A DNA stretch of 64,000 bases, from positions 62,001-126,000 of the IMG/VR virus record IMGVR_UViG_3300036770_006296; one strand, 5' to 3'. The notes beneath the pieces were generated by a model. It worked only from the letters and a program-made list of their open reading frames with translations, was not told the DNA's origin and did not search any database. A program made the position numbers and the translations under genes. Shown here one piece after another: positions 22,760-61,114 of this stretch; positions within the stretch are counted from its first letter, which is position 1; each line of letters begins with the position of its first letter.

Positions 22760-22817
22760 AAGATATTTATCCGTGAATTGTTTTTTTATTCCGAGAAGGA
22801 GCCGTATATTTGCAATG

Positions 22818-22900
22818 TAAAAACACTTCTTTGTTTTTCCATATTATTTAGGTTTATAATTGGTTATCATAAGACCGAGTCCACAAAGGCTCGGTTTTTT
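22818..22900 (+). ncRNA. candidate antisense-type small RNA
   Basis: TATATTTG at 22805-22812, ORF-less body complementary to leader+ATG, terminator 22873-22900. Confidence 0.5.
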
Positions 22901-22947
22901 GTTGTCCGTGAATTTGCGGACATCCCAGAATTTCTAAGAAAATCCCA

Positions 22948-23020
22948 GCGGCATCCCGAGCGGAACTCGAGCGGAATCCGAGCGGAAGGTCTGCGGCATC
23001 TCTGCGGAAGTCTCCGAGGA
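22948..23020. repeat. 11-bp-period GCGG(A/C)A array
   Basis: GCGG at 22948, 22960, 22971, 22982, 22993, 23004. Confidence 0.8.
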
Positions 23021-23144
23021 TTAATCCCCAGGGGAGCCACCGGGAAATATAATGCGAGGGAAATTTATCGGATCGGATTGGAATTTTTTGGAAATCATTT
23101 TTTTGATTGTAGAGAATTTTCTATCTTTGTAAGAAAAAGGGATT

Positions 23145-23675
23145 ATGAAAGACACTACCAAAGTTGCAGCATTAGCGGTCACAAGGAACATCGCAGACAA
23201 GCTTTACGAGGGTAACGACGTGAGCAAGCGTATGGGACGCATATTATCTATAACATCTGCCGTGCTGGAAAAGAGCGATGCTCGATTTGATAGAATGCGG
23301 GAAGAGTTACAGAGTGTATACGAGGAGATGTCCCGTGTACATAATAAATTGTATCAGGATTTGGGCGGGCAATTAGGTTCCGGTGAATTCTTCGGAGTGG
23401 ACATTGAGGATCTCGAAGGTAAGACGGATTTAAACTTTAAGCGGCTGGTTGAAGGAATCGATCCCGACGGATTTATGAGTCTTCAGCTTTCCCTTGGAGG
23501 ATTACGAGAGCTCATTGGTAAACTCTCGGCCGGTGTTCCCTTTAGAACCCCAGACTTGATTTTTGCCGAGAGACTACAGTTTGCTCATTGGTTGACGTTC
23601 ATGAGTGTGTACGAGAGTAAGCACCGAGATCGGGTTTTAAAAATAATCTCTAAGTACGATCCAAAAGCTTCTTAA
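23145..23675 (+). CDS. hypothetical protein
   Basis: EP upstream; stop abuts the next EP. Confidence 0.8.
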   Translation: MKDTTKVAALAVTRNIADKLYEGNDVSKRMGRILSITSAVLEKSDARFDRMREELQSVYEEMSRVHNKLYQDLGGQLGSGEFFGVDIEDLEGKTDLNFKRLVEGIDPDGFMSLQLSLGGLRELIGKLSAGVPFRTPDLIFAERLQFAHWLTFMSVYESKHRDRVLKIISKYDPKAS

Positions 23676-23726
23676 ATCATTTTTTTAATTAAATAGAATT
23701 TTCTACATTTGTAAAAACAATCAAAC

Positions 23727-24599
23727 ATGCCAAATCACATTTCTAACATTTTGACTATCGAAGGCGACTCCAAGAGGGTAGCACAGATTAAGAGCGATAT
23801 CATTTCCGTTGATGAGGAAGGGAATATCAGACACATTGATTTCAACAAGATCGTTCCGATGCCGGAGAGTTTGCATATCACGAGTGGCAGCAGTACGAGT
23901 AACGGGCTTGCTATCTTGAAATATCGTGCAGGTGATCCCACGGAGATTAATCAGATAATGGGATATCAATGGGCGACTGAGTTTGCGACCCCGGAGGATT
24001 TAATCAATCATATGCTCGAGAAGGGTACGGCTAATCTCGAAGAGGCTCAGAAGGCTTTGGATAACGAGAAGTTATACGGACACCTAGATTGGTATTCTTG
24101 GAGTATTGCTAATTGGGGTACTAAGTGGAACGCATATGACACCAACGAGAATGAAGACGACGGGATTTATTTCCAGACGGCTTGGAGTAATCCATATCCT
24201 GTCATGGAGGCTTTAAGCCGTAAGTATCCGGATGTTGTGTTTCATGTGAGATTTGCCGACGAGGATTTCGGTCACAATGTGGGCGAGTACAGTTTGGAAA
24301 ACGGAGAGGTTATCTCGGAGAACATTCCCGAGGGTGGTTCCGAGGAGGCTTATGATCTGGCCGCTGATATCACGGGATATGAAAGTTATCTCACTGACCG
24401 TGTGTATGATATCGAAGCAGAGACTATCGACGAGCTTGAGGATTACGAGAAGACTTATATCAAATCGGTTTACAACAAGGGTGTCATTGAAGACTTCCCG
24501 AGAGTTGTGATTGACTACATGTTGGAGTTAGCCGTTGCTGATGAGAACTTCGAGTTAGCTACTCAGCTAAGAGATATGATCGCTTGTAATGACGAGTAA
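23727..24599 (+). CDS. DUF1281/YubB ferredoxin-like domain protein
   Basis: MPNHISNILTI...IDFNKIVPMP...WYSWSIANWGTKWNAY...FQTAWSNP. Confidence 0.8.
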   Translation: MPNHISNILTIEGDSKRVAQIKSDIISVDEEGNIRHIDFNKIVPMPESLHITSGSSTSNGLAILKYRAGDPTEINQIMGYQWATEFATPEDLINHMLEKGTANLEEAQKALDNEKLYGHLDWYSWSIANWGTKWNAYDTNENEDDGIYFQTAWSNPYPVMEALSRKYPDVVFHVRFADEDFGHNVGEYSLENGEVISENIPEGGSEEAYDLAADITGYESYLTDRVYDIEAETIDELEDYEKTYIKSVYNKGVIEDFPRVVIDYMLELAVADENFELATQLRDMIACNDE

Positions 24600-24639
24600 T
24601 CATTTTTTTTAACAACAAACGTTTTCTATATTTAGGTGG

Positions 24640-25458
24640 ATGGACGATAAATCTAAGATAGTTAGAATGCGAGATATAAGCTTCGATCCCTCCTTATTCG
24701 AAACAATGAGGACGGGAAAGAAGATTGATAACTTGCTAAGCTCTGAAGGTGGATTTACAAGATCCACCAATTTTATTTTGGTGGGTGACCCAGGAATTGG
24801 TAAGAGTACGGTTTCGATGGATATCTTAGCGGATTTAAAGCGGAATGGTTATTCTGTTCTTTTTATCTCTGGTGAGATGGACCGCGTGGATTTATACCGC
24901 TATGTTAAACGATATCCTAAGTTTGCCGATCTCGACATTCTTTTCCTCGGTGAGTACATAGACGAAAATCCGATGAGAGTTATAGAGAGTACACTCGACC
25001 TAGGATACGATGTGGTGCTGATAGATTCATTCATCGAAGTTTGTGACACGGTCAAGGAAGGATGTAAGATCACTTCGAATGCTGCGGAAAAATGGCTGAT
25101 TGATTTAATGCGTAAGAACAATGCGGGTGGCAATTCTAAATCCGCTTACACCTCGTTCCTTTGTATTCAACAGGTTACTAAGGAAGGTGTGTTCGTCGGT
25201 TCGAATAAACTTAAACATAATACGACCGGTATGATGGAGCTTCGATTTACACCAGACGGATCCCGTTTTATTATGTTTACTAAGAACCGAAGAGGCGAGG
25301 TCAACAAGAAATTATACTTCGACCTTTCTTCCACTTCGGATGTAAACTATGAATACGAGACATTTAATATTTCCATAGAGAAAGCCGCAAAACACGTGAC
25401 GTCACGTAAGGATGACGAGGACGAAGAGAACACCACTAGTATATTTTTCGGGATGTAA
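24640..25458 (+). CDS. RadA/Sms-like RecA-family ATPase, ATPase domain only
   Basis: GDPGIGKST Walker A, LFISGEM, VVLIDS, QVTKEG..VGS..LKH, KNRRG. Confidence 0.8.
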   Translation: MDDKSKIVRMRDISFDPSLFETMRTGKKIDNLLSSEGGFTRSTNFILVGDPGIGKSTVSMDILADLKRNGYSVLFISGEMDRVDLYRYVKRYPKFADLDILFLGEYIDENPMRVIESTLDLGYDVVLIDSFIEVCDTVKEGCKITSNAAEKWLIDLMRKNNAGGNSKSAYTSFLCIQQVTKEGVFVGSNKLKHNTTGMMELRFTPDGSRFIMFTKNRRGEVNKKLYFDLSSTSDVNYEYETFNISIEKAAKHVTSRKDDEDEENTTSIFFGM

Positions 25459-25586
25459 TTCCTGCTTTTTTGCATCCCGAGGCCCAAGAGCGATCTTGGG
25501 TTTTTTTGTGGAATCATTTTTTATATTAGAAAATTCTATCTACATTTGAATTAGAAACAAACAACAAACAAACGACTATAATTGAT

Positions 25587-25841
25587 ATGGCAAAAAGAAA
25601 GATATCAAGAAAGAAGTTAGAGGAAAGGTTATCAAGGGGTGAGGTTAATTTCTCTTATGAGAAAATCGATGGTACTACACGTAAGGCTAGAGGTACCACT
25701 AATGTTGATTTGATACCTGAGGAGTGGAGACCTACTGGAGGTTCATTAGCGCATGATGGCACTGCGTATTTTGATTTGGATATCCAGGAGTGGCGTTCAA
25801 TTTCGTCGGTTGTTTCTAAGGTTAATCTTTTGGGACTATAA
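25587..25841 (+). CDS. DUF2693/WYL_2 SH3-like protein
   Basis: VNFSYEKIDGTTRKARGT...YFDLDIQEWRS. Confidence 0.75.
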   Translation: MAKRKISRKKLEERLSRGEVNFSYEKIDGTTRKARGTTNVDLIPEEWRPTGGSLAHDGTAYFDLDIQEWRSISSVVSKVNLLGL

Positions 25842-25851
25842 ATCAAATAAT

Positions 25852-26268
25852 ATGACTAATCGGAAAATTAAACTTAAGTTTTGGAAAATGGTCAGGTGGA
25901 TGGACAGAAAAATGATAAAGCCCACGCCTCTAACCGACACACAGCAAATGGGTGTTAAAATATTTGAAAGAACTGTGTCGATTAAGGATGCTGAAATCTT
26001 TTTCTCCCCCTTGAGCGACTCAATCTATATAGAGGTCGACGACATTTATATTATACTAGAGGGTAGCGATCTTCAAATCATCAACGGGAAATTCAGATAC
26101 GATTTACACTATCCAGATTCGGTTAGATCTAAGCTCGTAAGGAAAGTGCTTAACACGCTGGAGCAAAGAAGAATAGAAGTTGAAAGAAGAATAAAAGCTA
26201 AAAGCGATCGCACACTTAATTCCATAATGGAAGAAATCGAAGATATTCGAAAAGAAAAGGGACAATAG
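25852..26268 (+). CDS. hypothetical protein (start corrected)
   Basis: ATG after A-rich leader. Confidence 0.75.
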   Translation: MTNRKIKLKFWKMVRWMDRKMIKPTPLTDTQQMGVKIFERTVSIKDAEIFFSPLSDSIYIEVDDIYIILEGSDLQIINGKFRYDLHYPDSVRSKLVRKVLNTLEQRRIEVERRIKAKSDRTLNSIMEEIEDIRKEKGQ

Positions 26269-26459
26269 TTTGTTTTGTTTGTTCATAGAAAAGGACCGGG
26301 GTTTTTACTTCGGTCTTTTTTTGTGGTCTGCTGTGTGGTTGCACTGCACATCTCCTGAGGAACCCCCGGAAGGATGCTAAAAAGTTTTCTTGGAAAATCA
26401 TTTTTTTCTTTATATAGATTTTTCTACATTTATTAGGTAACCAAATAAAAAATTATGTC

Positions 26460-27269
26460 ATGAAATTATTTGATGAACGCCAGGTGAAGATGATGAAATA
26501 TCTTTCCTCTGGACTTCCACCACAGAGTAGATGGCGGTACAATCCGGTAACAGACCTTATAGATATAGAGGGGGATTTCAATTGTGGATGGACGGGTTTT
26601 AAAGATTTTAGAGGAGTTAAATTTGGAAAGATCACTGGACATTTCGATTGTTCCGGTATAGGACTCACCAGTTTAATAGGAGCTCCTGAAGAGGTCGGAA
26701 AAGATTTCAATTGTTCGAAAAACAATTTAACTAGTCTTGAAGGTGCACCTAAAAAGGTTGGTTATAGTTTCAATTGTTCAAAAAACTCTCTAGAAAGCCT
26801 AGAAGGAGGTCCTGAATATGTTAGGGGAAATTATGATTGTTCGAGTAATAAGCTCGTTACTCTTAAAGGATCCCCTAAAGCTTTACGCAGGGGGAGTAAA
26901 TTTATTTGCTCCAATAATCTTTTAAAAGATTTAAACGGGTTAATAGATAATGATTTTATGGGATTTTTTACATGTAAACGCAATCCCCTTACTAGTCTGG
27001 AAGGAGCACCAATCAACATAGAACCTTATTGGGATGGAAGTTATGAAGGAAAAATTTCATATTATGGAAATAAAGGTGTTTCGGGAAAGGTGCTCGAATT
27101 AATTCATCTCACGATGATTGAAAAGAAAGTGCCATTTATTATCGCTCTAGGTATTCTTAAGAACGAGATAAAATCGAGCGATCTTAAGAAGCTACTTCCT
27201 TCGGATCAGGAGAACGTAGAAGATGTACTAAAAGGAGCTAGCATGTTAGCTAAATTTGAATCTTTCTAA
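26460..27269 (+). CDS. LRR-21 family protein with KG-tag
   Basis: FNCSKNNLTSLEGAPKKVG repeats; ends KGASMLAKFESF. Confidence 0.88.
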   Translation: MKLFDERQVKMMKYLSSGLPPQSRWRYNPVTDLIDIEGDFNCGWTGFKDFRGVKFGKITGHFDCSGIGLTSLIGAPEEVGKDFNCSKNNLTSLEGAPKKVGYSFNCSKNSLESLEGGPEYVRGNYDCSSNKLVTLKGSPKALRRGSKFICSNNLLKDLNGLIDNDFMGFFTCKRNPLTSLEGAPINIEPYWDGSYEGKISYYGNKGVSGKVLELIHLTMIEKKVPFIIALGILKNEIKSSDLKKLLPSDQENVEDVLKGASMLAKFESF

Positions 27270-27331
27270 GAATCATTTTTTTATTTAGGTAGATTTTTCT
27301 ATATTTATGATAACCAATTAAACTTCCAGTT

Positions 27332-27559
27332 ATGGAAATGAACTTCATTAAAGTTATAGACGAGAGAACAAGAGACACAGTAGGATTTGCTGTTGTTGAG
27401 AAAGGCTCTCTGGAAGAGTCAATGATAGTTGACCGCTTCATAGACGAGGGAATGATTTTTGTAGCCTCGAATGAAGAGGAATTTAGTAATTTTGATGGAG
27501 ACTTCGTGAAGAGGTTTGGTAATGGAATGTTTTGTACTCACGCACCAATGGCAGATTAA
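27332..27559 (+). CDS. hypothetical protein
   Basis: EP and leader. Confidence 0.7.
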   Translation: MEMNFIKVIDERTRDTVGFAVVEKGSLEESMIVDRFIDEGMIFVASNEEEFSNFDGDFVKRFGNGMFCTHAPMAD

Positions 27560-27560
27560 T

Positions 27561-27833
27561 ATGACAAATAACGAAAGAATAGAGGCTTTAATAGTTGATT
27601 TAGTTGCTAAGAGTCCTTCGCAGGTTAATGTATGTGATTTGTTAATCGACTACATTAAGACTTTAACAAAAGACGAGATTATTGAATTCGTTGACAGAAC
27701 TACAACTGAAGTTTGGCCAGCTAGGTTTGACGAAGAAAGAAGCGGGTGTTTACACAAGGAGACATATGCTGCTGTTCGTCACGAGTCCGGGATGGCTTTG
27801 TACCGATGTAAAAAATGTAACGCCAAGGTATAA
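27561..27833 (+). CDS. hypothetical protein with C-terminal Zn ribbon (start corrected)
   Basis: CLH...CKKC. Confidence 0.65.
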   Translation: MTNNERIEALIVDLVAKSPSQVNVCDLLIDYIKTLTKDEIIEFVDRTTTEVWPARFDEERSGCLHKETYAAVRHESGMALYRCKKCNAKV

Positions 27834-27873
27834 ATCATTTTTTTCTTTAGATAGAATTTTCTACATTTACAAT

Positions 27874-28164
27874 ATGGAAACATCAGTAATTATAACACCT
27901 AACCCTTATGGCTTCGGAAGGAACTGGAGCTTACTTGTTAAGACGCCAGAACACACCAAGAGTTTTTATCTTGGACAGGACGTAAAGTTTTGTTCGAGAG
28001 TTCTTGGTATGGAGCCAAGAGATGTCGTTGAGGCTATAGGTACTGGAGAGATCTCGGAAGGTCAACCAGGAAATAAGAAGCTCGCCGAGTTTATTTGTGA
28101 GTGTTTAGAATTAAATGAAACCAACGTCATGGAGTTAGAGCCATGGAGTTTAAGCGCAGAATAA
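27874..28164 (+). CDS. hypothetical protein (start corrected)
   Basis: ATG just after EP. Confidence 0.75.
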   Translation: METSVIITPNPYGFGRNWSLLVKTPEHTKSFYLGQDVKFCSRVLGMEPRDVVEAIGTGEISEGQPGNKKLAEFICECLELNETNVMELEPWSLSAE

Positions 28165-28165
28165 T

Positions 28166-28489
28166 ATGGAAAGGATATACGTAGCAATCATTAAAGGACC
28201 TAAGGAATATTTACCAGGAGGCATTAAGTTCGAGAAGTTCGAAATCCATCAACATGAGATAGACGACTTTTTAGAGGATGGCGAAGAGGGAGAGACCGAG
28301 GAGGATGCTATCCAATACTATAAGGAAGAGTATGCTGCGGAGTGGGAGCAACGATGGTGCTCAGTTACTTTCCTGAGTGAGTCTGAGTTTAATTCCCTCT
28401 ATGGAGCGGTTCAGGAATTCTTTATCGACAATGGGGATGACGGAGAAGAGGAAGAGCAAGAAGAAGACGAATGGCAAGATTGGAAGTAA
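28166..28489 (+). CDS. highly acidic protein
   Basis: E/D-rich throughout. Confidence 0.8.
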   Translation: MERIYVAIIKGPKEYLPGGIKFEKFEIHQHEIDDFLEDGEEGETEEDAIQYYKEEYAAEWEQRWCSVTFLSESEFNSLYGAVQEFFIDNGDDGEEEEQEEDEWQDWK

Positions 28490-28499
28490 ATTAAAAAAT

Positions 28500-28724
28500 A
28501 TGAGACAGGTAGATATTAAAATTTCTGGTAGGAAGATCGAAGGCTATCCTACAGTTACAAGAACTATAAAGTTCAATAACGTCGAAGAATTTATATCAAA
28601 GGCGGATGAAGCTATAGACGAAACTGATTTTGGTAAGGTTGATTGCTATGTCGATAACTTTGATAATGTATTTAACGATGAGGAGATTAAGCTTCTAGAG
28701 GAGCAATGGTTTATTATTGAATAA
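28500..28724 (+). CDS. acidic hypothetical protein (start corrected)
   Basis: MRQVDIKISG...; stop abuts EP. Confidence 0.7.
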   Translation: MRQVDIKISGRKIEGYPTVTRTIKFNNVEEFISKADEAIDETDFGKVDCYVDNFDNVFNDEEIKLLEEQWFIIE

Positions 28725-28764
28725 ATCATTTTTTTAATTAATTAGAATTTTCTATATTTGAGAT

Positions 28765-29256
28765 ATGGCAACAAGGAGTAGAATAGGAATAGTAAACGAG
28801 GACGGAACAGTTTCCTCAATATATTGTCACTGGGACGGATACGTATCTCACCACGGTCCACTCTTACTTACGCATTATACAGACCGTGAAAAGGTTAAAG
28901 CCCTTATCGAATTGGGAAGTATTAGTGTCTTAGCTCAACACGTTGAGCCGCCTTCAGTCGTTGACGAGAATGATATCGATGGTAAGAAGGGTGAGAGGAT
29001 GCTTAAGAGATTTGGAGTCATAGGAAAACATTCTTTCTACGATCCACTACCAGGTGTTACTGTTGCTTATCATCGAGACAGAGGAGAGGAATACATCAAA
29101 CCGAGAATTAATAAGTCGCTAGAGGATTATTTTCTAGCAGACAATGAAGAATATGGCTACGTCTTTACCCTTGAGGGTGAATGGCTAGTCAAGTCGGGGT
29201 ACAACGAAAGTGCTCCAATTAGACCAATCGCTGAGGTTTTAGCAGAAGAAACTTAG
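28765..29256 (+). CDS. conserved phage protein (TRSxIG...YCHWDGY) with internal KG-tag
   Basis: ...DGKKGERMLKRFGVIG... Confidence 0.8.
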   Translation: MATRSRIGIVNEDGTVSSIYCHWDGYVSHHGPLLLTHYTDREKVKALIELGSISVLAQHVEPPSVVDENDIDGKKGERMLKRFGVIGKHSFYDPLPGVTVAYHRDRGEEYIKPRINKSLEDYFLADNEEYGYVFTLEGEWLVKSGYNESAPIRPIAEVLAEET

Positions 29257-30219: not shown

Positions 30220-30291
30220 TTTCCAAAATCATTTTTTTTATCAAGTAGAATATTCTACTTTAGCAATGTAAACCAATAAACACAAATAAAA

Positions 30292-54768: not shown

Positions 54769-55056
54769 ATGAACACTTACAAATTTAGAGCAGAATGCCT
54801 TCACGATGTGATACAATTCATGAGTCATGCTCCAGAGGTAATACAACAGATAGATGTACAAAAGGATGAAAGGTTTCCTGATTGCTATGTCACTCTTAAA
54901 ACCACCTCAGAGATGTCAGAAGTACTAAATAAAATACTTGAAATGCAAGGAGACGTTCACGTTATGTTTGAGAGTCTTCAACCAGAAGGGGAATACACAG
55001 GAGAAAGAATAAGAAGCTTTCATTCATCATCAAAAGACAACTTCATGGAGAAGTAA
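54769..55056 (+). CDS. hypothetical protein
   Basis: EP upstream. Confidence 0.75.
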   Translation: MNTYKFRAECLHDVIQFMSHAPEVIQQIDVQKDERFPDCYVTLKTTSEMSEVLNKILEMQGDVHVMFESLQPEGEYTGERIRSFHSSSKDNFMEK

Positions 55057-55294
55057 AAAAGACTATTCTGTGATTAGTTTAGTTTGATTAACACCCAAGA
55101 TAGGGATTCGGCTTCGGCTCGGATCCCTTTTTTGCGAGCCGAGGTTTTTTGACCTGGCCTGGATTAATCTCTGGGGAACCCCAGGAATCCTGATCCAGCA
55201 GATGTAAGAGAAGTGTAAACTTTTTTCAGAAATCATTTTTATTCCTGTAGAAAATTCTATATATTTGTATTGTTAATCAATCAAACAAAAATAA

Positions 55295-55444
55295 ATGAAA
55301 GCAGAAACAAAAAAGAAATTAGAATTCTTAATGGAATTAGGTTTAACCCAAAATGAAATTAATGAACTTCTAGATAATCAATCTATTCTTGATGAATCAA
55401 AAGAATTCAAAAAAGAAGAAGTTGAAGAAGATGAAGATTACTAA
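55295..55444 (+). CDS. 49-aa acidic peptide, not in track
   Basis: MKAETKKKLEFLMELG...EEDEDY; EP upstream, terminator downstream. Confidence 0.7.
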   Translation: MKAETKKKLEFLMELGLTQNEINELLDNQSILDESKEFKKEEVEEDEDY

Positions 55445-55656
55445 GGGGTTAGTAATAAAAAAGGGAAGGAGACTTAGGTCTCCTTTTTTTGTGGGGAAAA
55501 TCTAGACCAGCTAGATGCTCCTGCGGTGCCCCAGGAATCCTGATCCAAACCCCAATAAATTTTTTTTAGAAAATTCCACTTTTTTCCAAGAATCATTTTT
55601 TATATTAGAATATTCTACATATATTTGTATAGTTAATCAATTAAACAATATCAATT

Positions 55657-55968
55657 ATGAAAAAGGAAATGACAGCAGAACAAAAAGCAAAAAAGGCGGC
55701 AGCTAACAAGGCGTACAGAGAGCGCAAAAAAATGCAATCTCAAAACTGGATGGAACTCGACAAGTTCGAAATGAGTTTCGAGCATAAAGTTCGACTTTTC
55801 AAAAACCTCAAATTGGAAATCACAAATTCCTATTGCGCATCTCCGGGGACAGTTTTGAAATTTGAAAAACTCACTAATAACGATAACACAATCGTTTATC
55901 GGGTTCGCCGCACAGGTCGAAGAACTTTCTTCACCACCTCCGTCCACCTTCACGCTCCCGCTGAATAG
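55657..55968 (+). CDS. basic protein family member 2
   Basis: Near-identical to 51704..52006. Confidence 0.85.
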   Translation: MKKEMTAEQKAKKAAANKAYRERKKMQSQNWMELDKFEMSFEHKVRLFKNLKLEITNSYCASPGTVLKFEKLTNNDNTIVYRVRRTGRRTFFTTSVHLHAPAE

Positions 55969-56093
55969 CCGGGACTCACCATAGAAAGGAGCTTAGGCTC
56001 CTTTTTTTGTGCCCAAAGGTTTCTGGATGTAGGCTGAGATAAACTCCTGGGGCTCCTCAGGAAATTTTCACATCTTCCTTATCTATAAGATTT

Positions 56094-56198
56094 ATGGAAG
56101 AGATAGATAAAATAAAAAGATGGGGTTGTATAGGAATAGTATTCATTACTATCCTATGGACTTCACTTATCTACTGGGCATTGTCCAAAGCATTCTGA
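56094..56198 (+). CDS. 34-aa TM peptide, not in track
   Basis: MEEIDKIKRWGCIGIVFITILWTSLIYWALSKAF between two palindromes. Confidence 0.45.
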   Translation: MEEIDKIKRWGCIGIVFITILWTSLIYWALSKAF

Positions 56199-56304
56199 GG
56201 ATCCTCCGAGAATCCCAGCTGGCCCAGAAATAATAATCAGGAATCATTTTTTTATTTGTGGAAAAATCTATATATTAGCTTGTTAATCAATTAAACAAAA
56301 GCCA

Positions 56305-56460
56305 ATGTATTCTTTAGATTGTGATTATTACACAAAACAATTCCCATCCATCGATGATCTCATATCGGATATTATATCATCTGGCATGGACCCAAATTAT
56401 GTAATAACCTATAATGGTGTACCCATAGGTTATCAAGCTATTGAGCTAATTCAATTTTAA
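56305..56460 (+). CDS. 51-aa protein, not in track
   Basis: MYSLDCDYY...QAIELIQF; paralog of next ORF. Confidence 0.75.
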   Translation: MYSLDCDYYTKQFPSIDDLISDIISSGMDPNYVITYNGVPIGYQAIELIQF

Positions 56461-56517
56461 GAAATCATTTTTTTCTTCAAATAGATTTTTCTACATTTAC
56501 ATTATAAAACAAATTTT

Positions 56518-56757
56518 ATGTATTCATTAGACTGTGATTACTACAAAAAAGAATTCTCAACCCTTGATGAACTCTTGGACGATATTATACTATCTGGTAT
56601 GGACCCAAATTATTTAATAACATACAATGGGGCCACCTTCAACTACCAAGCTATTGAACTAATAACTGGACGTATGAGCCAGCATTTCCCGAATGTTAAC
56701 ATTACCAAAGAACTCATGATGACATTTTGCAGTTGGGTAAAGTCCCGGAAGAATTAA
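56518..56757 (+). CDS. paralog of 56305 with new C-terminus from an insertion
   Basis: 17-bp direct repeat at 56647-56663 and 56759-56775. Confidence 0.75.
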   Translation: MYSLDCDYYKKEFSTLDELLDDIILSGMDPNYLITYNGATFNYQAIELITGRMSQHFPNVNITKELMMTFCSWVKSRKN

Positions 56758-56845
56758 TCAAGCTATTGAACTAATTCAATTTTAAGAAATCATTTTTTTC
56801 TTCAAATAGATTTTTCTACATTTACATTATAAAACAAAGACCTAC

Positions 56846-57076
56846 ATGTTAATTTACACAATAATTTTTACCCTAGCTCTCTTGGTCCTAATAGCTACAA
56901 AAACGACAGGGATTGACCAACCCACACTAGATTATAAAGAGAGCTATGCAGCGGAGGTGAGTAATGCCAGCTACTTTACTCTGCCTCGAGGACAGCCCAG
57001 TAGATTGTGGGCTTCTATCATAACAAATAAATCACCGCCCCGTAACAAGGGTAAGCCCGGATATAATACAAGTTAA
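56846..57076 (+). CDS. small signal-peptide/TM protein
   Basis: Hydrophobic N-term; EP upstream. Confidence 0.6.
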   Translation: MLIYTIIFTLALLVLIATKTTGIDQPTLDYKESYAAEVSNASYFTLPRGQPSRLWASIITNKSPPRNKGKPGYNTS

Positions 57077-57204
57077 AGAAAGACCCTTATTACAGGGTCT
57101 TTTTTGTGGACTATTGTTTACAATAAACCTCCTATTGTAAACCACTGGGGCTCCGCAGGAAAATCAAGAAGAAGATAAGATATATATAGTATAAAAAACA
57201 AATT

Positions 57205-57645
57205 ATGAAACATATTAGGCTTTACGAATACTATTCTGAATTACCAACTTCATTCAGTGTAGCAGAGATCCAAAACATGTCGGAGACGGACTTTTTAACA
57301 AACCTTAAAATGTTAAAAGATAAGGGAGACGAAGAGCAGGCTTTTTCGTTATTACAAATTTGGATGAATCACCATAAAGATGCGGCGAACGACATGGATT
57401 TCAATGCGAAACTCGGAGGTATATTTCGTGACGTTTCTCTTGAATCAGATGACAGCCCTAAGTCTGGCAATTTCCTTCATGATAAAGCAGTGCAATTGAA
57501 CACTTATCTTGCTAAGAACAAACGTGAAGGCGTGGTAAAACAAATAGAAGAGGTAAAAAGAAATATAAAAAATTACGAAGAAATGCTTAGAGTGGCTAAA
57601 GATAGATTAGATAGATTAGAATTTGAAATGACAAAAACTATGTAA
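57205..57645 (+). CDS. CTS-bearing coiled-coil protein
   Basis: MKHIRLYEYYSE; LP at 57179. Confidence 0.8.
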   Translation: MKHIRLYEYYSELPTSFSVAEIQNMSETDFLTNLKMLKDKGDEEQAFSLLQIWMNHHKDAANDMDFNAKLGGIFRDVSLESDDSPKSGNFLHDKAVQLNTYLAKNKREGVVKQIEEVKRNIKNYEEMLRVAKDRLDRLEFEMTKTM

Positions 57646-57871
57646 TTTGAATTCATATAATAATAAGAAAGACTCTTAGGAGTCTTTTTTTGTGATCTAA
57701 ACCACTGGGGCTCCGCAGGAAATCCAATGGTAGATGTGATTTATACTCTCATGCCCCCTCCGGGGGGACGCGTGCGTACGTATGCACGCGTAGGCACTTT
57801 TTTCAGGAATCGTTTTTTTATCTGTAGAAAATTCCATACATTAGCTATGTTAATCAATTAAATAAATACAA

Positions 57872-58006
57872 ATGGAAAAGGCAGTAAATGTTTTAGCAGC
57901 AATTTGGGTAGGTGTTTTAATGTCAATGACAATCATCTCATTAGGCTATGCAATAGTTCAAGTTGTAACCGGCAATGTACATTCCACAGCAAGTTTTGAA
58001 TTTTAA
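57872..58006 (+). CDS. 44-aa TM peptide, not in track
   Basis: ...WVGVL...QVVTGNVHSTASFEF; paralog of 59097. Confidence 0.7.
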   Translation: MEKAVNVLAAIWVGVLMSMTIISLGYAIVQVVTGNVHSTASFEF

Positions 58007-58171
58007 ATGAAAACAACAATCACAAAAGAAGCCCTAAGAAAAGCCAGAATGGGCTCAGTAAGAGAAGACCAGAAAGCACAAGGTTTCTTTGATGGTAGAT
58101 TTGTAACAAGATGTGAGGAAGACAAAAAGAAATACACAAGAAAAGAGAAACACAAATCTAAATCCTACTAA
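58007..58171 (+). CDS. 54-aa basic peptide, ArfA-like C-terminal pattern
   Basis: GFFDGRFVTRCEEDKKKYTRKEKHK. Confidence 0.6.
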   Translation: MKTTITKEALRKARMGSVREDQKAQGFFDGRFVTRCEEDKKKYTRKEKHKSKSY

Positions 58172-58435
58172 ACAAAAACAAAATCTTTTAAACCCTAGGT
58201 TCGGCCTAGGGTTTTTTTGTGGGCTAAAAATCCCAAGCTATGGTAAATCCTCCGAGGCACCCCAGGAACTTTTCCATAGATTTATTTTTTATATTTCTCT
58301 ATTTCTCCCATGCGGCACCCCAGAGTAACCCTATAAATTTTTTTTAGAAATTTCCACTTTTTTCCAAGAATCATTTTTTAGTTTGTAGAAAAGTCTATAT
58401 ATTAGCTAAGTTAATCAATTAAACAAAAACAAATT

Positions 58436-58753
58436 ATGAAAAACACAGAAAAAAAACCAGTTGCTAAAAAAGCTACAAAAACCACTAAAGTTTCTAACAC
58501 CCCTGATTGGATGACTTTGGACAAGTTCGAAATGAGTTTCACCCACAAAGTTAGATTATTTAGAAATCTAAAATTGGAAACCACAAACTCCTACTGTGCA
58601 AGCCCAGGGACTTCCCTAAAGTTTGAAAAAATCAAAAATGAAGATAATACAATTGTCTTCCGGGTTCGCCGCAATGGCCGCCGCACCTTCTTCACCACCA
58701 ACGCGGAACTCCAGGCGCCAGCTGAAATCCCCGCTGAAATCCCCGCTGAATAA
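58436..58753 (+). CDS. basic protein family member 3
   Basis: DWMTLDKFEMSF...CASPGTSLKFE...RTFFTT. Confidence 0.85.
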   Translation: MKNTEKKPVAKKATKTTKVSNTPDWMTLDKFEMSFTHKVRLFRNLKLETTNSYCASPGTSLKFEKIKNEDNTIVFRVRRNGRRTFFTTNAELQAPAEIPAEIPAE

Positions 58754-58896
58754 CCGGGGTTTCACAAAACTTCAAAAGACCCTTCGGGGTCTTTTTTTGT
58801 GACCAAATTTTAGGACAGATCCTAATCCTCCTGAGGCACCCCTGGAACTTTACCATATATTCAGTTTTTATATTTAAAAAAAATTCTTATATTTGT

Positions 58897-58958
58897 AGTT
58901 CATAAAATATTTATTCTTTGGAGTAAGCCAGGAACCCTAGATTTATCTAGGGTTTCTT
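58897..58958 (+). ncRNA. candidate small RNA, copy 1
   Basis: TATATTTG 58888-58895, ORF-less body, terminator 58930-58958. Confidence 0.5.
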
Positions 58959-59096
58959 GTGTGTAAAGAAATCTAGATCTATGGTAAATCTCCTGCGGAA
59001 CCCCAGGAAAAGAATCCAAAAAGATTCAAGAAATCGTTTTTATCTTTGTAGAAAAATCCATATATTTATATAGTTAATCAATTAAACAAAATAAAA

Positions 59097-59228
59097 ATGA
59101 AAACAGCAAATGTAATTGGAATGGCTTGGGTAGGAATTTTAATAGCAACAGTTATAGTTGCTTTAGGTTTCACAGTTTATCAAGTATGCACGGGGAACTA
59201 CCACGGCACAGCAAGTTTTGAGTTTTAA
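59097..59228 (+). CDS. 43-aa TM peptide, not in track
   Basis: ...WVGIL...QVCTGNYHGTASFEF. Confidence 0.7.
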   Translation: MKTANVIGMAWVGILIATVIVALGFTVYQVCTGNYHGTASFEF

Positions 59229-59270
59229 TTAAAGTTTTGAATTTCAATTAAAAAAAATTCTTATATTTGT

Positions 59271-59332
59271 AGTTCATAAAATATTTATTCTTTGGGATAA
59301 ACAAGAAACCCTAGATTCATCTAGGGTTTTCT
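59271..59332 (+). ncRNA. candidate small RNA, copy 2
   Basis: TATATTTG 59262-59269; near-identical body; terminator 59303-59332. Confidence 0.5.
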
Positions 59333-59470
59333 GTGTGTAAAGAAATCTAAATCTATGGTAAAACTCCTGCGGCGCCTCAGGGATGAAGAATCAAAAAAGA
59401 TTCAAGAATCATTTTTATCTTCGTAGAAAAATCCATATATTTATAATGTTAATCAATTAAAATCTATCAC

Positions 59471-59542
59471 ATGAAAAAACCACTTGTAATCTTCATCACA
59501 CCAAATGGATTAATGGTTATAGAAGATATCATAGCTAACTAA
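59471..59542 (+). CDS. 23-aa peptide
   Basis: MKKPLVIFITPNGLMVIEDIIAN between EP and terminator. Confidence 0.45.
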   Translation: MKKPLVIFITPNGLMVIEDIIAN

Positions 59543-59662
59543 CACAACCACACATCAGAAATCAAAAGGGAGGATTGTATCTTCCCTTTTTTTGTTTAAC
59601 AATTTTTAAGAATCTATTAGACAACCGAGGAGGCACCCCACGAATATATAATAGACCAATGT

Positions 59663-60046
59663 ATGGTTAAAGTGCCAGTGAGTATAGGAGAACTAATTGA
59701 TAAGTTATCAATCCTCCAAGTTAAAAAGACAAAAGTCAAATCACAAGAGAAATTATCATTTATAGAGAAAGAGTATAATCTCTTATATGAGATGAGTTGT
59801 GATTATCTAAAAAACAATGACATTCAAAACACATTTAATGAATTAATAGCAATCAATCTTGCTCTTTGGGAAATAGAAGATTCACTAAGAGTAATAGAAA
59901 GCACAAAACAATTTGATGCCCATTTCATTGAATTAGCAAGAAGTGTTTACTACACCAATGATGAGAGATTTAGACTCAAAGATAAAATCAACTCTCTTAC
60001 ACATTCAGAAATCAAAGAACAAAAAGATTACCAAGGCTATCTATAA
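59663..60046 (+). CDS. DUF6165 family protein
   Basis: VPVSIGELIDKLSILQVK...LWEIED...ARSVYYTNDERF..K..IN. Confidence 0.8.
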   Translation: MVKVPVSIGELIDKLSILQVKKTKVKSQEKLSFIEKEYNLLYEMSCDYLKNNDIQNTFNELIAINLALWEIEDSLRVIESTKQFDAHFIELARSVYYTNDERFRLKDKINSLTHSEIKEQKDYQGYL

Positions 60047-60176
60047 ATTCCCTGCGGAGCCTCAGGGACTCTTCATTAATTTGCAAATGCCTAAGAAAAT
60101 AATAGATAGAATCTTCTCTGGAATCATTTTTTTATTTGGAGTATAATGAATATATTTACTCTATAACACACAACAC

Positions 60177-60806
60177 ATGATAGCAACAATAATAGTTATA
60201 ATAAACATAGTACTTCTAGAAGTCATCCTAAGTATAGATAATGCAGCAGTGATGGCAACCATGGTTAAAAAGCTTCCACAATCCCAACAAAAGAAAGCCC
60301 TCACCTATGGTATCTTAGGAGCATACCTCTTCAGAGGACTTGCACTCCTCTTTGCATCCCTACTCCTCTCCATAGCATGGCTGAAAATAGTCGGAGGCGC
60401 ATATCTGTTCTATATAGGTGTCAAAAGCCTCTCCCCTAAAACACCAGAAGGAGAAATTAAATCATCTCCCTCATTCTGGACCACAGTACTATCAATAGAA
60501 GTAATGGACCTTGTCTTTAGTATAGATAATGTCTTAGCTGCAGTAAGCTTCACCAAAAATCTCAACCTCATTATAGCAGGAGTATTCATAGGCATCCTTG
60601 GTATCAGATTTGCCACCACTAAATTCATCAACATCATCAATCAAAACCCACAGATAGAAAAAATAGCATACATAGTTATATCAGCACTAGGACTAAAACT
60701 CATCCTCTCCTATTTCTTACCATCCCTAAACACTGAATCAGTAGACCTAGCCTTCTCTATCCTCACTCTAGCAGCATTTACCATCCCACTAATCAAAAAG
60801 AGATAA
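60177..60806 (+). CDS. TerC family membrane protein
   Basis: LEVILSIDNA...ALTYGILGAYLFR...DLVFSIDNVLAA. Confidence 0.9.
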   Translation: MIATIIVIINIVLLEVILSIDNAAVMATMVKKLPQSQQKKALTYGILGAYLFRGLALLFASLLLSIAWLKIVGGAYLFYIGVKSLSPKTPEGEIKSSPSFWTTVLSIEVMDLVFSIDNVLAAVSFTKNLNLIIAGVFIGILGIRFATTKFINIINQNPQIEKIAYIVISALGLKLILSYFLPSLNTESVDLAFSILTLAAFTIPLIKKR

Positions 60807-60981
60807 AATAACACCTCTATTATACAAGGGCCTTTTAGGCCCTTTTTTGTGACCCCACTTTTTGCCAACTCTTATCACTTCTTTCTCTGGGGCTCCTCAG
60901 AGGGCTAAAGCTACCCAAGCAAGATTAAGCTCCCTGAGGCACCCTAGCGAAACCCCTCATCAACCCAAATATTAACCCCAC

Positions 60982-61058
60982 AAAAAAGGCCCCTTTAGAA
61001 GAGACCCTTTTTGCTTAGTTCTGTAACCAACTAAAAAAGATATATGGAGATCTTTTAC
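60982..61058 (-). ncRNA. candidate small RNA on - strand
   Basis: Full EP on - strand (61063-61101), ORF-less body, G.U-containing terminator with TTTTTTGTG tail on - strand. Confidence 0.55.
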
Positions 61059-61114
61059 ATAGCTAATATAGAGATATTTCTACAATTAAAAAAATGATTC
61101 CTGGGACTAGCTGA

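What the first reader, a model, noticed from the sequence alone, without database searches (positions are those of the whole stretch)
22805..61101. Four ORF-less early promoter-to-terminator units, each antisense to a translation-initiation region
Seen: units at 22818-22900 (+), 58897-58958 (+), 59271-59332 (+) and 61058-60982 (-). Their reverse complements read as leader+start codon: GATAACCAATTATAAACCTAAATAAT-ATG-GAA, CCAAAGAATAAATATTTT-ATG-AAC (two units) and GTAACCAACTAAAAAAGATAT-ATG-GAG. The - strand unit's terminator needs G.U pairs, so it folds best on that strand. Established: Bacteroidota initiate largely without SD pairing, using A-rich leaders. Inference: phage sRNAs that block specific phage or host initiation regions.
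Basis: partly seen in the sequence, partly recalled or inferred. Interest (0 to 1): 0.72.

Follow-up and report, generated by a model that had tools for sequence, protein, structure and literature searches.

The report
Phage small RNAs against translation starts
Four short gene-less promoter-to-terminator units are really there in this large freshwater phage. One of them is a conserved small RNA copied from a previously undescribed, many-copy small-RNA family of Sphingobacteriaceae bacteria, and it is reshaped to pair with the translation start of a phage DNA-binding protein.

Summary
All four units exist at the stated coordinates: a Bacteroidota-type -7 box, 60-85 nt without a conserved ORF, then a hairpin with a T-run. 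No RNA data could be obtained, so transcription is inferred.

- **U1 (22817-22900, +)** is a real gene family. I found 12 sequence variants in related phages. All share a covarying 5' hairpin, an invariant unpaired 18-nt core and a covarying terminator.
  - It is homologous (82% over 62 nt) to a 7-37-copy sRNA-like family in Sphingobacteriaceae genomes. That family is absent from Rfam.
  - In all nine phage lineages tested, U1 pairs (-20 to -27.5 kcal/mol) with the translation-initiation region of the helix-turn-helix gene at 21553, 1.3 kb upstream.
  - That site ranks first or second among all starts in three genomes. Bacterial homologues pair about 7 kcal/mol worse.
- **U1 and U4 (61058-60982, -)** also complement the 5'-terminal leader GUAACCAAUUAAA that heads about half of at least 50 block mRNAs. 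The same anti-leader seed, next to a terminator, sits in a conserved 3'UTR.
- **U4, U2 and U3** have no homologue in the one relative that covers their loci.
- **U2 and U3** are a recent tandem duplicate with no target better than shuffled controls.

The parts
21098..21143 (+). Promoter of the HTH1-HTH2 operon. It has a T-run, TTCCGAGGAG and the -7 box TAAATTTG, the same sub-class as the U1 promoter.
   Evidence: nhmmer hit of 21.4 bits; sequence; compared by eye with the U1 promoter.
21161..21532 (+). HTH1, a 123-aa helix-turn-helix protein.
   Evidence: Weak Pfam HTH_38/Sigma70_r4_2 hits and PHROG 323 'transcriptional regulator, D5-like'. Conserved in G002/G003.
21528..21566 (+). Proposed U1 target: the HTH1 stop codon, a 20-nt spacer, the HTH2 AUG (21553) and codons 2-5.
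   Evidence: RNAduplex -27.1 kcal/mol against shuffles -12.1 +/- 3.0. Top of 518 ORF starts in the genome. The orthologous site is first of 204 in G002 and second of 147 in G003. Alignment of the site with the reverse complement of U1 in 9 lineages.
21553..22197 (+). HTH2, a 214-aa protein with an N-terminal HTH; probable DNA-binding regulator.
   Evidence: Pfam HTH_Tnp_1/HTH_28 and PHROG 323. Atlas neighbours are viral HTH proteins. No PDB relative by sequence.
22770..22812 (+). U1 promoter: T-run at 22781-22787 and -7 box TATATTTG at 22805-22812.
   Evidence: The -7 box is invariant in all phage variants and shared with the bacterial homologues.
22817..22900 (+). U1 RNA. 5' hairpin at 22819-22838. 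Core/seed at 22845-22866. Terminator stem at 22873-22894. T-run at 22895-22900.
   Evidence: Fold -21.8 kcal/mol, z -3.6. 12 variants with the same architecture and different stems. Homologous to Sphingobacteriaceae units.
23091..60170 (+). Array of at least 50 copies of one promoter (AATCATTTTTTT, the TAGAAnTTTCTA palindrome, and a -7 box TAyATT followed by TG, AG or TA). About half are followed by the 5'-terminal leader GUAACCAAUUAAA. These are the proposed secondary targets of U1 and U4.
   Evidence: Repeat families D5-D20; list; nhmmer hits; leaders; motif counts by strand.
29257..29306 (+). Anti-leader seed TGTTTAATTGGTT directly after the stop codon of gene 28765..29256, followed by a terminator. 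Candidate 3'UTR-derived small RNA.
   Evidence: The seed is conserved after the orthologous stop codon in G002 and G003, while the C-terminal codons and the terminator stems differ. Enrichment of such seeds next to terminators has p about 1e-3.
41578..41633 (+). Second 3'UTR anti-leader seed (TTAATTGGTTAAGG) plus hairpin, after gene 41159..41581.
   Evidence: Not present after the G002 orthologue.
58888..58958 (+). U2: -7 box TATATTTG, about 60 nt of RNA with a small hairpin (58911-58926) and a terminator-like hairpin whose tail is UUUCUUGUGUGU.
   Evidence: -21.7 kcal/mol, z -4.0. No target above shuffles.
59262..59332 (+). U3: tandem duplicate of U2 (92% identical). Stem changes between the two copies keep the pairing.
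   Evidence: TTTG-N22-TATATTTG match. In a related strain one contig skips 377 nt between 59016 and 59394, so the duplication is polymorphic.
61059..61102 (-). U4 promoter: a full canonical copy on the opposite strand, at the right edge of the block.
   Evidence: nhmmer 37.2 bits; the only canonical promoter without a gene.
60982..61058 (-). U4 RNA. 5' hairpin. Anti-leader UUUAGUUGGUUAC at 61036-61024. G.U-dependent terminator at about 61012-60981.
   Evidence: 30 of 52 leaders pair at -10 kcal/mol or better; 0 of 100 shuffles reach this. With G.U allowed, 16 of 52 leaders have a run of at least 11 contiguous pairs against 0.5 in shuffles.

Best explanation
The four units are small non-coding transcription units of a roughly 206-kb freshwater phage. 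The phage uses Bacteroidota-type promoters and Shine-Dalgarno-less, A-rich leaders.

U1 is a genuine small-RNA gene: own promoter, 5' hairpin, single-stranded conserved seed, intrinsic terminator. It descends from a multi-copy chromosomal sRNA-like family of Sphingobacteriaceae, which is the likely host group. In the phage it has been remodelled so that it base-pairs with the initiation region of the HTH2 gene, from the stop codon of HTH1 to codon 5 of HTH2. Pairing there should hide the unstructured A-rich stretch and the AUG from the 30S subunit, and so lower HTH2 synthesis relative to HTH1.

In the G000 lineage the same seed, and that of the lineage-specific U4, also match the 5'-terminal leader shared by about half of the at least 50 block mRNAs. 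Seeds embedded in two 3'UTRs match it too. These RNAs probably damp or time translation of many block genes at once.

U2/U3 are a recent duplicate of a further ORF-less unit whose target, if any, is not in the phage.

Shown: anatomy, conservation, homology, complementarity.
Inferred: transcription, pairing in vivo, repression.
For: **Anatomy.** Consensus -7 boxes at the right distance, strand-specific terminators, folds better than shuffles.

**U1 is conserved in position.** It is present in G001, G002 and G003 and in many metagenome contigs.
- 12 variants all fold as a 5' hairpin with different stem sequences, an invariant 18-nt core with mean unpaired probability 0.5-0.85, and a terminator with compensatory changes.

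**U1 has bacterial homologues.**
- blastn: 82% over 62 nt, E 8.6e-10.
- The alignment shares the -7 box, the GTAAA start, the 5' part, a 22-nt core and the hairpin + T-run.
- 7-37 copies per genome against 2-5 for the control pattern.
- 35 of 40 GTDB-wide exact matches lie in Sphingobacteriaceae genera.
- Hairpin G.U pairs number 75 on the sense strand against 15 on the other.

**U1 has a specific target.**
- Duplexes with each lineage's own HTH2 start are -19.8 to -27.5 kcal/mol, p <= 0.022 against 500 shuffles, in 9 of 9 lineages.
- The site ranks 1/518, 1/204 and 2/147 among ORF starts.
- Phage-specific changes increase the match. In G002 three changes relative to the host-type core give 18 of 18 contiguous pairs. 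In G000 the 5' part pairs with AUGGGAAAACAAA.
- Bacterial homologues pair with the phage site at a mean of -15.0, against -22 to -23 for phage U1s.

**Anti-leader complementarity.**
- U1 and U4 pair with 42 and 30 of 52 leaders at -10 kcal/mol or better; 0 of 100 shuffles reach this.
- Seed runs exceed shuffles.
- Two A-to-G changes (U4, and U1 of G003) keep the pairing as G.U.
- Anti-leader 8-mers lie next to terminators more often than chance, p about 1e-3. One such 3'UTR seed is conserved in three lineages.

**Mechanism.** Bacteroidota initiation depends on unstructured, A-rich upstream sequence (PMC6847099).
Against: - No transcript evidence. The two 'RNA-Seq' runs that hold the phage behave as DNA, and a real metatranscriptome holds nothing.
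- Energies alone are weak. The best hit of shuffled U1 against all starts is about as good as the real best hit.
- There is no lineage-by-lineage co-variation. Each U1 pairs no better with its own TIR than with other lineages' TIRs: -23.3 against -21.9.
- Part of the complementarity could be inherited similarity, because the HTH2 start is itself leader-like.
- U1 of G002 and G003 is not clearly better than shuffles against their own leaders. The anti-leader role may therefore be confined to the G000 lineage.
- U4 and U2/U3 are absent from G002.
- One sRNA promoter against about 50 leader-bearing promoters is unfavourable stoichiometry for a global repressor.
- The similarity of U1 and U4 to promoter-leader modules runs a few bases upstream of the predicted start sites. 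That points to origin by inverted duplication rather than to selection on RNA pairing alone.
Confidence: 0.55

Rival explanations
1. U1 works mainly on the host. As a phage copy of a host multi-copy sRNA with the same invariant core, it would mimic that family. It could switch the family's host regulon on or off, or occupy the family's protein partner. The match to HTH2 would then be secondary.
For: A 22-nt core is identical to bacterial 'type a' copies, and homology extends over the promoter and 5' part. The core is invariant across 20-40 paralogues per genome and several genera, which implies a conserved host partner. The core carries two GG motifs, as some protein-binding RNAs do (my own observation, untested).
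Against: The G002/G003 lineage has changed the host-type core at three places, and each change improves pairing with the phage HTH2 start. Phage U1s pair with that site 7-8 kcal/mol better than bacterial copies do. The host target is unknown. The phage leader motif is not enriched in five Sphingobacteriaceae genomes.
Confidence: 0.25
2. U4 and U2/U3, and the extra leader-like parts of U1, are by-products of recombination among the at least 50 repeated promoter-leader modules. They would be inverted or duplicated fragments that happen to end at hairpins, with no function of their own.
For: The U4 body is an exact inverted canonical leader plus ATGGAG, lying between GTAA and TTAC. Similarity to promoter-leader modules extends upstream of the predicted start sites. 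U4, U2 and U3 are missing in G002, and the U4 pattern is unique in IMG/VR. The U2/U3 duplication is polymorphic among close strains.
Against: U4 keeps a top-scoring promoter and a 16-pair terminator that needs G.U pairs on its own strand. The U2 and U3 copies differ by changes that keep both stems paired. Anti-leader seeds sit next to terminators more often than chance, and one is conserved. For U1 this rival is excluded by conservation in 12 variants.
Confidence: 0.25
3. The units act in cis on DNA or transcription rather than as diffusible RNAs. They would be boundary insulators or attenuators of the block, or transcripts that activate an adjacent replication origin. U1 is followed by iteron-like repeats, and U4 is preceded by a repeat array.
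For: U1 and U4 flank the block and both point inward. Repeat arrays lie next to both (22901-23060 and 61110-61260), and similar arrays exist in relatives.
Against: Strong terminators stop both RNAs before the repeats. The genes downstream of U1, U2 and U3 have their own full promoters, so attenuation would control nothing. Such a role does not explain an invariant single-stranded core shared with bacterial chromosomal copies in unrelated contexts.
Confidence: 0.1
4. The reverse strands encode micro-proteins starting at the ATGs the reader saw (18, 9, 9 and 17 codons).
For: ATG preceded by an A-rich leader-like string in all four.
Against: The ATG is absent in G001, G003, L201, L220 and others. 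The reading frames and peptides are unrelated among variants. There is no -7 box upstream on that strand. Terminator tails and G.U pairs favour the other strand.
Confidence: 0.02

Closest known systems
c4 antisense RNA of phages P1/P7 (own knowledge)
   Same: A phage-encoded small RNA, made from a locus separate from its target site, pairs with the ribosome-binding region of a phage regulatory operon (icd-ant) and blocks its translation.
   Different: c4 is cut out of a longer transcript and belongs to an immunity system of a temperate phage. U1 has its own promoter and terminator. Its target has no Shine-Dalgarno sequence. U1 is homologous to host chromosomal sRNAs.
sar RNA of P22 and OOP RNA of lambda (own knowledge)
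   Same: Short promoter-to-terminator phage units without ORFs whose RNA is antisense to a regulator's mRNA. sar covers the ant initiation region.
   Different: Both are cis-antisense, transcribed from the opposite strand of the target itself. U1 lies 1.3 kb away on the same strand as its target and pairs imperfectly. No conserved gene overlaps any of the four units.
Qrr sRNAs of Vibrio (bioRxiv 10.1101/2021.07.01.450815 and PMC3730234, abstracts listed)
   Same: The bacterial relatives of U1 resemble Qrr1-5 in layout. They are several paralogous about 80-nt sRNAs per genome with an invariant internal stretch and a terminator. Many sit behind a sigma-54-like -24/-12 motif (19 of 62 units).
   Different: No sequence relation. 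Copy number is far higher (up to 37). The phylum lacks Hfq. Function and regulators are unknown. The sigma-54 reading is a consensus match only.
Pseudo-ToxI RNA of phage PhiTE (own knowledge)
   Same: A phage carries its own version of a host-encoded regulatory RNA.
   Different: ToxI is a protein-binding antitoxin of an abortive-infection system. Nothing links the Sphingobacteriaceae units to a toxin. The opposite-strand ORFs I read are short and not conserved.
Bacteroides thetaiotaomicron intergenic sRNAs (PMC7366714, PMC10994844; seen, abstracts only)
   Same: Hfq-independent Bacteroidota sRNAs with their own TAnnTTTG-type promoter and an intrinsic terminator that regulate mRNAs by pairing.
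   Different: Chromosomal and single-copy, with no sequence similarity. Rfam 15 has no family matching U1-U4 or the bacterial units.
3'UTR-derived sRNAs of enterobacteria, e.g. CpxQ and SroC (own knowledge)
   Same: A seed placed between a stop codon and the mRNA's terminator, as at 29257-29306 and 41578-41633.
   Different: Processing and function are untested here. The seeds target the phage's own shared leader.

Membership tests
Trans-acting base-pairing sRNA gene | Own promoter and intrinsic terminator bounding 50-300 nt | tested here: met
   Consensus -7 boxes and strand-specific terminators for all four units. These are consensus matches, not mapped RNA ends.
Trans-acting base-pairing sRNA gene | No conserved ORF on either strand | tested here: met
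   No ATG ORF on the sense strand. Reverse-strand ATGs and frames are not conserved in U1 variants. U2-U4 cannot be compared.
Trans-acting base-pairing sRNA gene | Conserved, accessible seed flanked by covarying structure | tested here: met
   U1 only: invariant 18-nt core, mostly unpaired, with hairpins of differing sequence in 12 variants. Not testable for U2-U4, which have a single lineage.
Trans-acting base-pairing sRNA gene | Stable transcript of the predicted size | not testable with these tools
   The RNA-labelled runs look like DNA; the metatranscriptome is empty.
Trans-acting base-pairing sRNA gene | Target regulated through seed pairing (compensatory mutations) | not testable with these tools
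   Only predicted duplexes and their conservation are available.
Sphingobacteriaceae multi-copy core-21 sRNA-like family (undescribed) | Core (T/A)ATTTAGGTT(N1-2)TAATTGGTT | tested here: met
   U1 of G000 shares 22 contiguous bases with 'type a' bacterial copies. G002/G003 variants have diverged at 3-4 positions.
Sphingobacteriaceae multi-copy core-21 sRNA-like family (undescribed) | Promoter 25-50 nt upstream, CAT just 5' of the core, hairpin + T-run 5-15 nt downstream | tested here: met
   Alignment A5. CAT is present in 54 of 62 bacterial units and a T-rich tail in 39 of 62. U1 has all three features.
Sphingobacteriaceae multi-copy core-21 sRNA-like family (undescribed) | Terminator loop motif CUC(C/U)CCGC | tested here: not met
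   Phage terminator loops differ (CACAAA, CGCAAG and others). This is a minor feature.
Cis-antisense RNA (sar/OOP type) | Overlaps a gene or its leader on the opposite strand | tested here: not met
   No conserved opposite-strand gene starts in or spans the units. Whether the 5'UTR of the - strand gene 22759..22307 reaches U1 is unknown.
Transcription attenuator / riboswitch leader | Controls read-through into a downstream gene that lacks its own promoter | tested here: not met
   Full promoters follow U1 (23091), U2 (59029) and U3 (59406). U4 faces the 3' end of a convergent gene.
Any Rfam 15 family | Covariance-model score at or above the gathering threshold | tested here: not met
   No hit in the window. 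Sub-threshold hits are terminator-driven only. The bacterial units are also unmatched.

The most novel reading that the evidence does not exclude
The phage has captured a member of a host multi-copy sRNA family and built an RNA-level timing circuit around it. U1 would come from a host-type promoter and hold back HTH2, a candidate activator of the at least 50-promoter block. Together with U4 and the 3'UTR seeds, it would then titrate the shared SD-less 5' leader of dozens of block mRNAs. This would act as a global 'anti-leader' switch. The seed is shared with 20-40 host sRNAs, so host sRNAs and phage leaders could also cross-talk, either as an RNA-based host brake on the phage or as a phage sponge for host sRNAs.
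Probability: 0.15. Interest if true: 0.85.

Novelty: new member of a known kind. Interest (0 to 1): 0.62.

Why it matters
Regulatory RNAs of Bacteroidota phages are essentially unexplored. How translation is controlled without Shine-Dalgarno pairing is an open question.

This locus offers three things:
- A concrete, testable pair: an 84-nt RNA and the start region of a phage DNA-binding protein, conserved in at least nine uncultured phage lineages.
- A shared 5' leader that several RNAs could mask at once.
- An undescribed 7-37-copy sRNA-like family in Sphingobacteriaceae, with a phage-borne member. That family points to the host group of an uncultured 200-kb freshwater phage, and to RNA mimicry or capture between phage and host.

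If U2-U4 turn out to be by-products, the lesson is the opposite. Repeated promoter modules can spawn orphan promoter-terminator units that look like sRNA genes.

Tried and rejected
- **Rfam.** Gathering and E-value modes on the window, the unit regions and bacterial loci gave nothing meaningful. There are no tRNAs.
- **Phage collection.** blastn gave no match.
- **Neighbour-gene anchors.** I used TerC, DUF6165 and the 210-aa gene right of U4 to find relatives. TerC and DUF6165 are mobile auxiliary genes in unrelated phages with other promoters. The third found only a near-identical contig.
- **The 290-aa MPNH protein.** It is widespread, but only three IMG/VR records share the promoter system.
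- **Read laying.** No expression evidence.
- **U4-type pattern search in IMG/VR.** One chance hit only.
- **Whole-genome RNAduplex scans.** They are noisy. Shuffled RNAs reach similar best energies, so I relied on orthologous rank and conservation instead.
- **Lineage-specific co-evolution.** A test of each U1 paired with its own TIR against other lineages' TIRs was negative.
- **accA hits.** Nine metagenome hits of my U1 pattern fell in the first codons of flavobacterial accA, in the sense orientation. I treat them as an artefact of an AT-rich pattern.
- **Type I toxin-antitoxin reading of the bacterial units.** The opposite-strand ORFs are short and unrelated, so this is not supported.
- **Host leaders.** The idea that host mRNAs share the phage leader motif was not supported.
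- **A specific target for U4.** An 88-aa gene at genome position 166652 on the - strand has a 14-nt exact match plus ATGGA. This is suggestive but not above shuffles.

Full report
**Setting.** The window is bases 62001-126000 of a 206,617-bp IMG/VR virus record. Near-identical DNA occurs in subsurface and many freshwater metagenomes.

Bases 23091-60170 carry at least 50 copies, all on the + strand, of one long promoter. It consists of AATCATTTTTTT, a TAGAAnTTTCTA palindrome, and a -7 box TAyATT followed by TG, AG or TA. Almost every copy is followed 4-40 nt later by a small gene.

G of the Bacteroidota -7 element TAnnTTTG lies at -5 (Baez et al. 2019, PMC6847099). On that rule, about half of these mRNAs begin with GUAACCAAUUAAA or a close variant. 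Leaders are A-rich and lack Shine-Dalgarno sequences, as expected for this phylum. Three other IMG/VR records use the same promoter and leader: G001, G002 and G003.

**The observation.**
- Predicted starts are 22817, about 58900, about 59274 and 61058 (- strand).
- All four end in hairpins with T-rich tails. They fold better than shuffles (z -3.1 to -4.0).
- The U4 hairpin needs G.U pairs: -25.6 kcal/mol on its own strand against -11.6 on the other.
- U4 has a full canonical promoter. It is the only one in the genome without a gene behind it.
- U1 and the HTH operon at 21098 share a second promoter form (T-run, TTCCGAG, TAnATTTGCAA).
- U2 and U3 are 92% identical. They belong to a 375-bp tandem duplication that also duplicated a canonical promoter and a tiny gene. 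One contig from a related strain lacks one copy.
- A genome-wide scan for terminators not preceded by an ORF end returns the four units among 18 sites.

Transcription could not be tested, because the 'RNA-Seq' runs that hold the phage look like DNA and a true metatranscriptome holds nothing.

**U1 is a conserved RNA gene.**
- It sits at the same place in G001, G002 and G003. That place lies between a divergent 150-aa gene and an array of short repeats that precedes the first block promoter.
- A pattern built from its conserved pieces found it in about 20 more metagenome contigs that also carry the phage promoter. That gave 12 distinct variants.
- Every variant folds into a 5' hairpin starting at or near +1, a mostly unpaired invariant core (TATTTAG, R, TTT, one variable base, T, R, ATTG), and a terminator.
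- The 5' stems differ in sequence (AAAAACA/UGUUUUU, GUAAAUU/AAUUUAC, GUAGAUC/GAUUUAC with G.U, GUUAAAGG/CCUUUAAU).
- The terminator stems show compensatory changes.
- The reverse-strand ATG is missing in five variants, and the reverse-strand frames are unrelated. There is therefore no hidden - strand gene.

**U1 has bacterial relatives.**
- One 'metagenome' variant (L220) turned out to lie between an ECF sigma factor gene and another chromosomal gene. It is identical to a Pedobacter locus.
- An exact-pattern scan of one genome per prokaryotic species returned 40 stretches. Of these, 35 are in Sphingobacterium, Mucilaginibacter, Pedobacter, Parapedobacter and Olivibacter.
- Five such genomes hold 29, 8, 22, 37 and 7 copies of the 21-nt core (up to 3 mismatches). 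The reversed control pattern gives 2-5.
- blastn with the 106-nt U1 region gives 82% identity over 62 nt (E 8.6e-10). The match covers the -7 box, the GTAAA start, the 5' part and the core. The alignment shows the same layout through to the hairpin and T-run.
- In 62 bacterial units, hairpin G.U pairs are 75 on the core-sense strand against 15 on the other. 39 units have a T-rich tail. 54 have CAT immediately 5' of the core. 19 have a sigma-54-like -24/-12 motif upstream.
- Neither Rfam 15 nor the paper library knows the element.

U1 is therefore a phage-borne member of an undescribed chromosomal sRNA-like family. This also suggests a Sphingobacteriaceae-like host. U2, U3 and U4 have no match in those genomes.

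**What U1 pairs with.** A search for the complement of the core led to the spacer between HTH1 and HTH2, 1.3 kb upstream on the same strand.
- The reverse complement of U1 aligns with this region from the HTH1 stop codon to codon 5 of HTH2 in every lineage.
- Predicted duplexes are -19.8 to -27.5 kcal/mol, with p <= 0.022 against 500 shuffles in 9 of 9 lineages.
- Among all ATG ORF starts, the site ranks first of 518 in G000, first of 204 in the G002 segment and second of 147 in the G003 segment.
- Shuffled RNAs can reach similar best energies, so the weight lies on the orthologous rank.
- It also lies on the direction of change. Relative to the host-type core, the G002/G003 lineage has a G-to-A change, a one-base deletion and a GG-to-GU change. 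Each removes a wobble, a bulge or a mismatch. In G002 the result is 18 of 18 contiguous pairs.
- The G000 lineage keeps the host-type core. Its 5' part (UUUGUUUUUCCAU) has become complementary to AUGGGAAAACAAA of HTH2, unlike the bacterial copies.
- Bacterial homologues pair with the phage sites at -15.0 on average, against -22 to -23 for phage U1s.
- At one core position the pairs are U.G, C-G and U-A in different lineages, and never a mismatch.
- There is no excess of own-lineage over cross-lineage pairing.
- HTH2 is a 214-aa protein with an N-terminal helix-turn-helix and viral relatives only. Its role is unknown.

**The anti-leader property.**
- In G000, U1 and U4 pair with 42 and 30 of 52 leaders at -10 kcal/mol or better. 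The best duplexes reach -23.4 and -22.1. None of 100 shuffles reaches these figures. Seed-run tests agree.
- U1 of G002 has an 8-nt or longer perfect complement in 24 of 42 leaders (p 0.007).
- U1 of G003 has 9 or more contiguous pairs, counting G.U, in 12 of 21 leaders (p 0.04). By energy these two are not distinguishable from shuffles.
- The U4 body is a complete inverted canonical leader plus ATGGAG. Its one deviation from the consensus leader is an A-to-G change that pairs as G.U.
- The seed UUUAAUUGGUU also lies between the stop codon and the terminator of gene 28765..29256. It is conserved there in G002 and G003, while the last codons and the terminator stems differ. A second such 3'UTR seed at 41578 is G000-specific.
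- Anti-leader 8-mers fall within 35 nt upstream of terminators 3 times out of 33, in a zone covering 0.6% of the genome (p about 1e-3).

**U4 and U2/U3.**
- G002 covers the right end of the block and has no U4. It has a terminator and then a similar repeat array.
- The small membrane-protein gene that follows U2 has a G002 orthologue without any U2-like unit.
- A promoter-plus-anti-leader pattern is unique to this lineage in IMG/VR.
- U2/U3 show no complementarity to any phage start or leader beyond shuffles. Their reverse-complement 'start codon' is a CAT at +5 in an AT-rich stretch.
- The differences between U2 and U3 keep both stems paired. This is the only hint of constraint.

**Mechanism, with its status.**
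- Shown: the anatomy, conservation, homology and complementarity described above.
- Inferred: U1 is transcribed from a host-type promoter. It pairs with the HTH1-HTH2 mRNA over the A-rich spacer and AUG, and lowers HTH2 initiation. Initiation in this phylum depends on an unstructured, A-rich upstream region. U1, U4 and the 3'UTR seeds also pair with the extreme 5' end of many block mRNAs.
- Speculative: HTH1/HTH2 act on the block promoters, so that U1 sets their timing.

**Rivals.** The main rivals are these:
- U1 chiefly mimics the host family.
- U4 and U2/U3 are recombination by-products of the repeated promoter modules.
- The units have cis roles at the block boundaries.
- Micro-proteins are encoded on the reverse strands (rejected).

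**Comparison.** In function the closest known cases are the phage antisense RNAs that mask the initiation region of a regulator: c4 of P1/P7 acting in trans, and sar of P22 and OOP of lambda acting in cis (my own knowledge). The bacterial relatives resemble Qrr-type multi-copy sRNAs in layout only.

I file the finding as a new member of a known kind (base-pairing sRNA). It has two unusual traits: descent from a host multi-copy family, and a seed that matches a leader shared by dozens of phage mRNAs.

Noticed in passing
window 23091-60170 (+); also 2939, 4840, 9443, 12954, 13732, 15251 (-): At least 50 copies of one roughly 50-nt promoter (AATCATTTTTTT, palindrome TAGAAnTTTCTA, -7 box TAyATT followed by TG, AG or TA), one in front of almost every small gene. 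Half of the -7 boxes deviate from the host consensus at the nearly invariant T-6/G-5 positions. A phage factor (perhaps HTH1/HTH2) may therefore be needed, and 'early' is unproven.
   Followed up: partly
window 28765, 29908, 39900, 44183, 51130, 52153, 54769 (gene starts): Several block genes have their ATG only about 4 nt after the -7 box. Their mRNAs would be leaderless or nearly so, unlike the roughly 25-nt leaders of the others.
   Followed up: no
window 22901-23060: A GC-rich non-coding stretch after U1 with GAGCGGAA three times at 11-nt spacing, TCTGCGG twice, and an inverted repeat GTCCG-N8-CGGAC. It is almost 100% identical in G001, although the flanking protein is only 84% identical. 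G002/G003 have TGTCCGA four times at the same place. It may be an operator array or a replication origin.
   Followed up: partly
window 61110-61260: An array of GGCTAAAATGG / AGGGGGCTAAAA repeats just outside the block. A 71%-similar array lies at the same position in G002 (193250-193400). It may be an origin, a packaging site or a genome-end feature.
   Followed up: partly
window 33062, 35523, 39195, 42638, 44107, 52077, 53134 and others: A perfect GC palindrome CTGGGGAACCCCAG (or GGGGTTCCCC in G002) 20-30 nt upstream of many block promoters, without a T-run. It may be a protein site, an RNA processing site or an unusual terminator.
   Followed up: no
window 15800-19400 (-): Eight consecutive - strand genes built from 60-nt (20-aa) tandem repeats, with strong negative GC skew.
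   Followed up: no
window 26642-26824, 33269-33728, 40030-40489, 44741-45011; 31861-32094, 34395-34538: 63-nt (21-aa) repeats shared by four + strand genes, and 12-nt repeats in two paralogous about 500-aa genes that begin [10 protein letters not shown].
   Followed up: no
window 59663-60806: DUF6165 and TerC membrane-protein genes at the end of the block. Both also occur in many unrelated phages (35-74% identity) in different contexts, so they behave as mobile auxiliary genes.
   Followed up: partly
window 59097-59228 and 59472-59543: Two tiny genes behind U2 and U3: a 43-aa membrane peptide ending GNYHGTASFEF, with an orthologue in G002, and a 23-aa ORF.
   Followed up: partly
outside the window: genome 129,990-130,040 (window coordinate about 67,990-68,040): A GGTTCGACCCC T-loop-like sequence with an acceptor-like end, followed by a terminator and with no ORF before it. 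It may be a tRNA- or tmRNA-like gene. I did not run ARAGORN there.
   Followed up: no
outside the window: genome 200,552-200,770 and 203,913-204,100: Two more short promoter-to-terminator units, each with only a 24-25-codon ORF.
   Followed up: no
loci L228-L272 (Sphingobacteriaceae genomes): An undescribed 7-37-copy sRNA-like family with an invariant 21-nt core, covarying hairpins with loop CUC(C/U)CCGC, often in tandem, and many behind a sigma-54-like -24/-12 motif. In S. tabacisoli nine copies lie within 40 kb among Fic, XRE-HTH and small genes.
   Followed up: partly
loci L192, L194, L197, L199, L206, L207, L213, L217, L221: The first codons of flavobacterial accA (MEYLDFEL) read almost like the U1 core in the sense orientation, behind a GTATATTTG box. 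Probably chance from an AT-rich search pattern.
   Followed up: no
L074 (G002) about 19,113 = G002:179,113: G002 has its own UUUUAGUUGGUUAAG seed directly before a terminator at the end of a block gene. Anti-leader seeds in 3'UTRs may therefore arise repeatedly.
   Followed up: no
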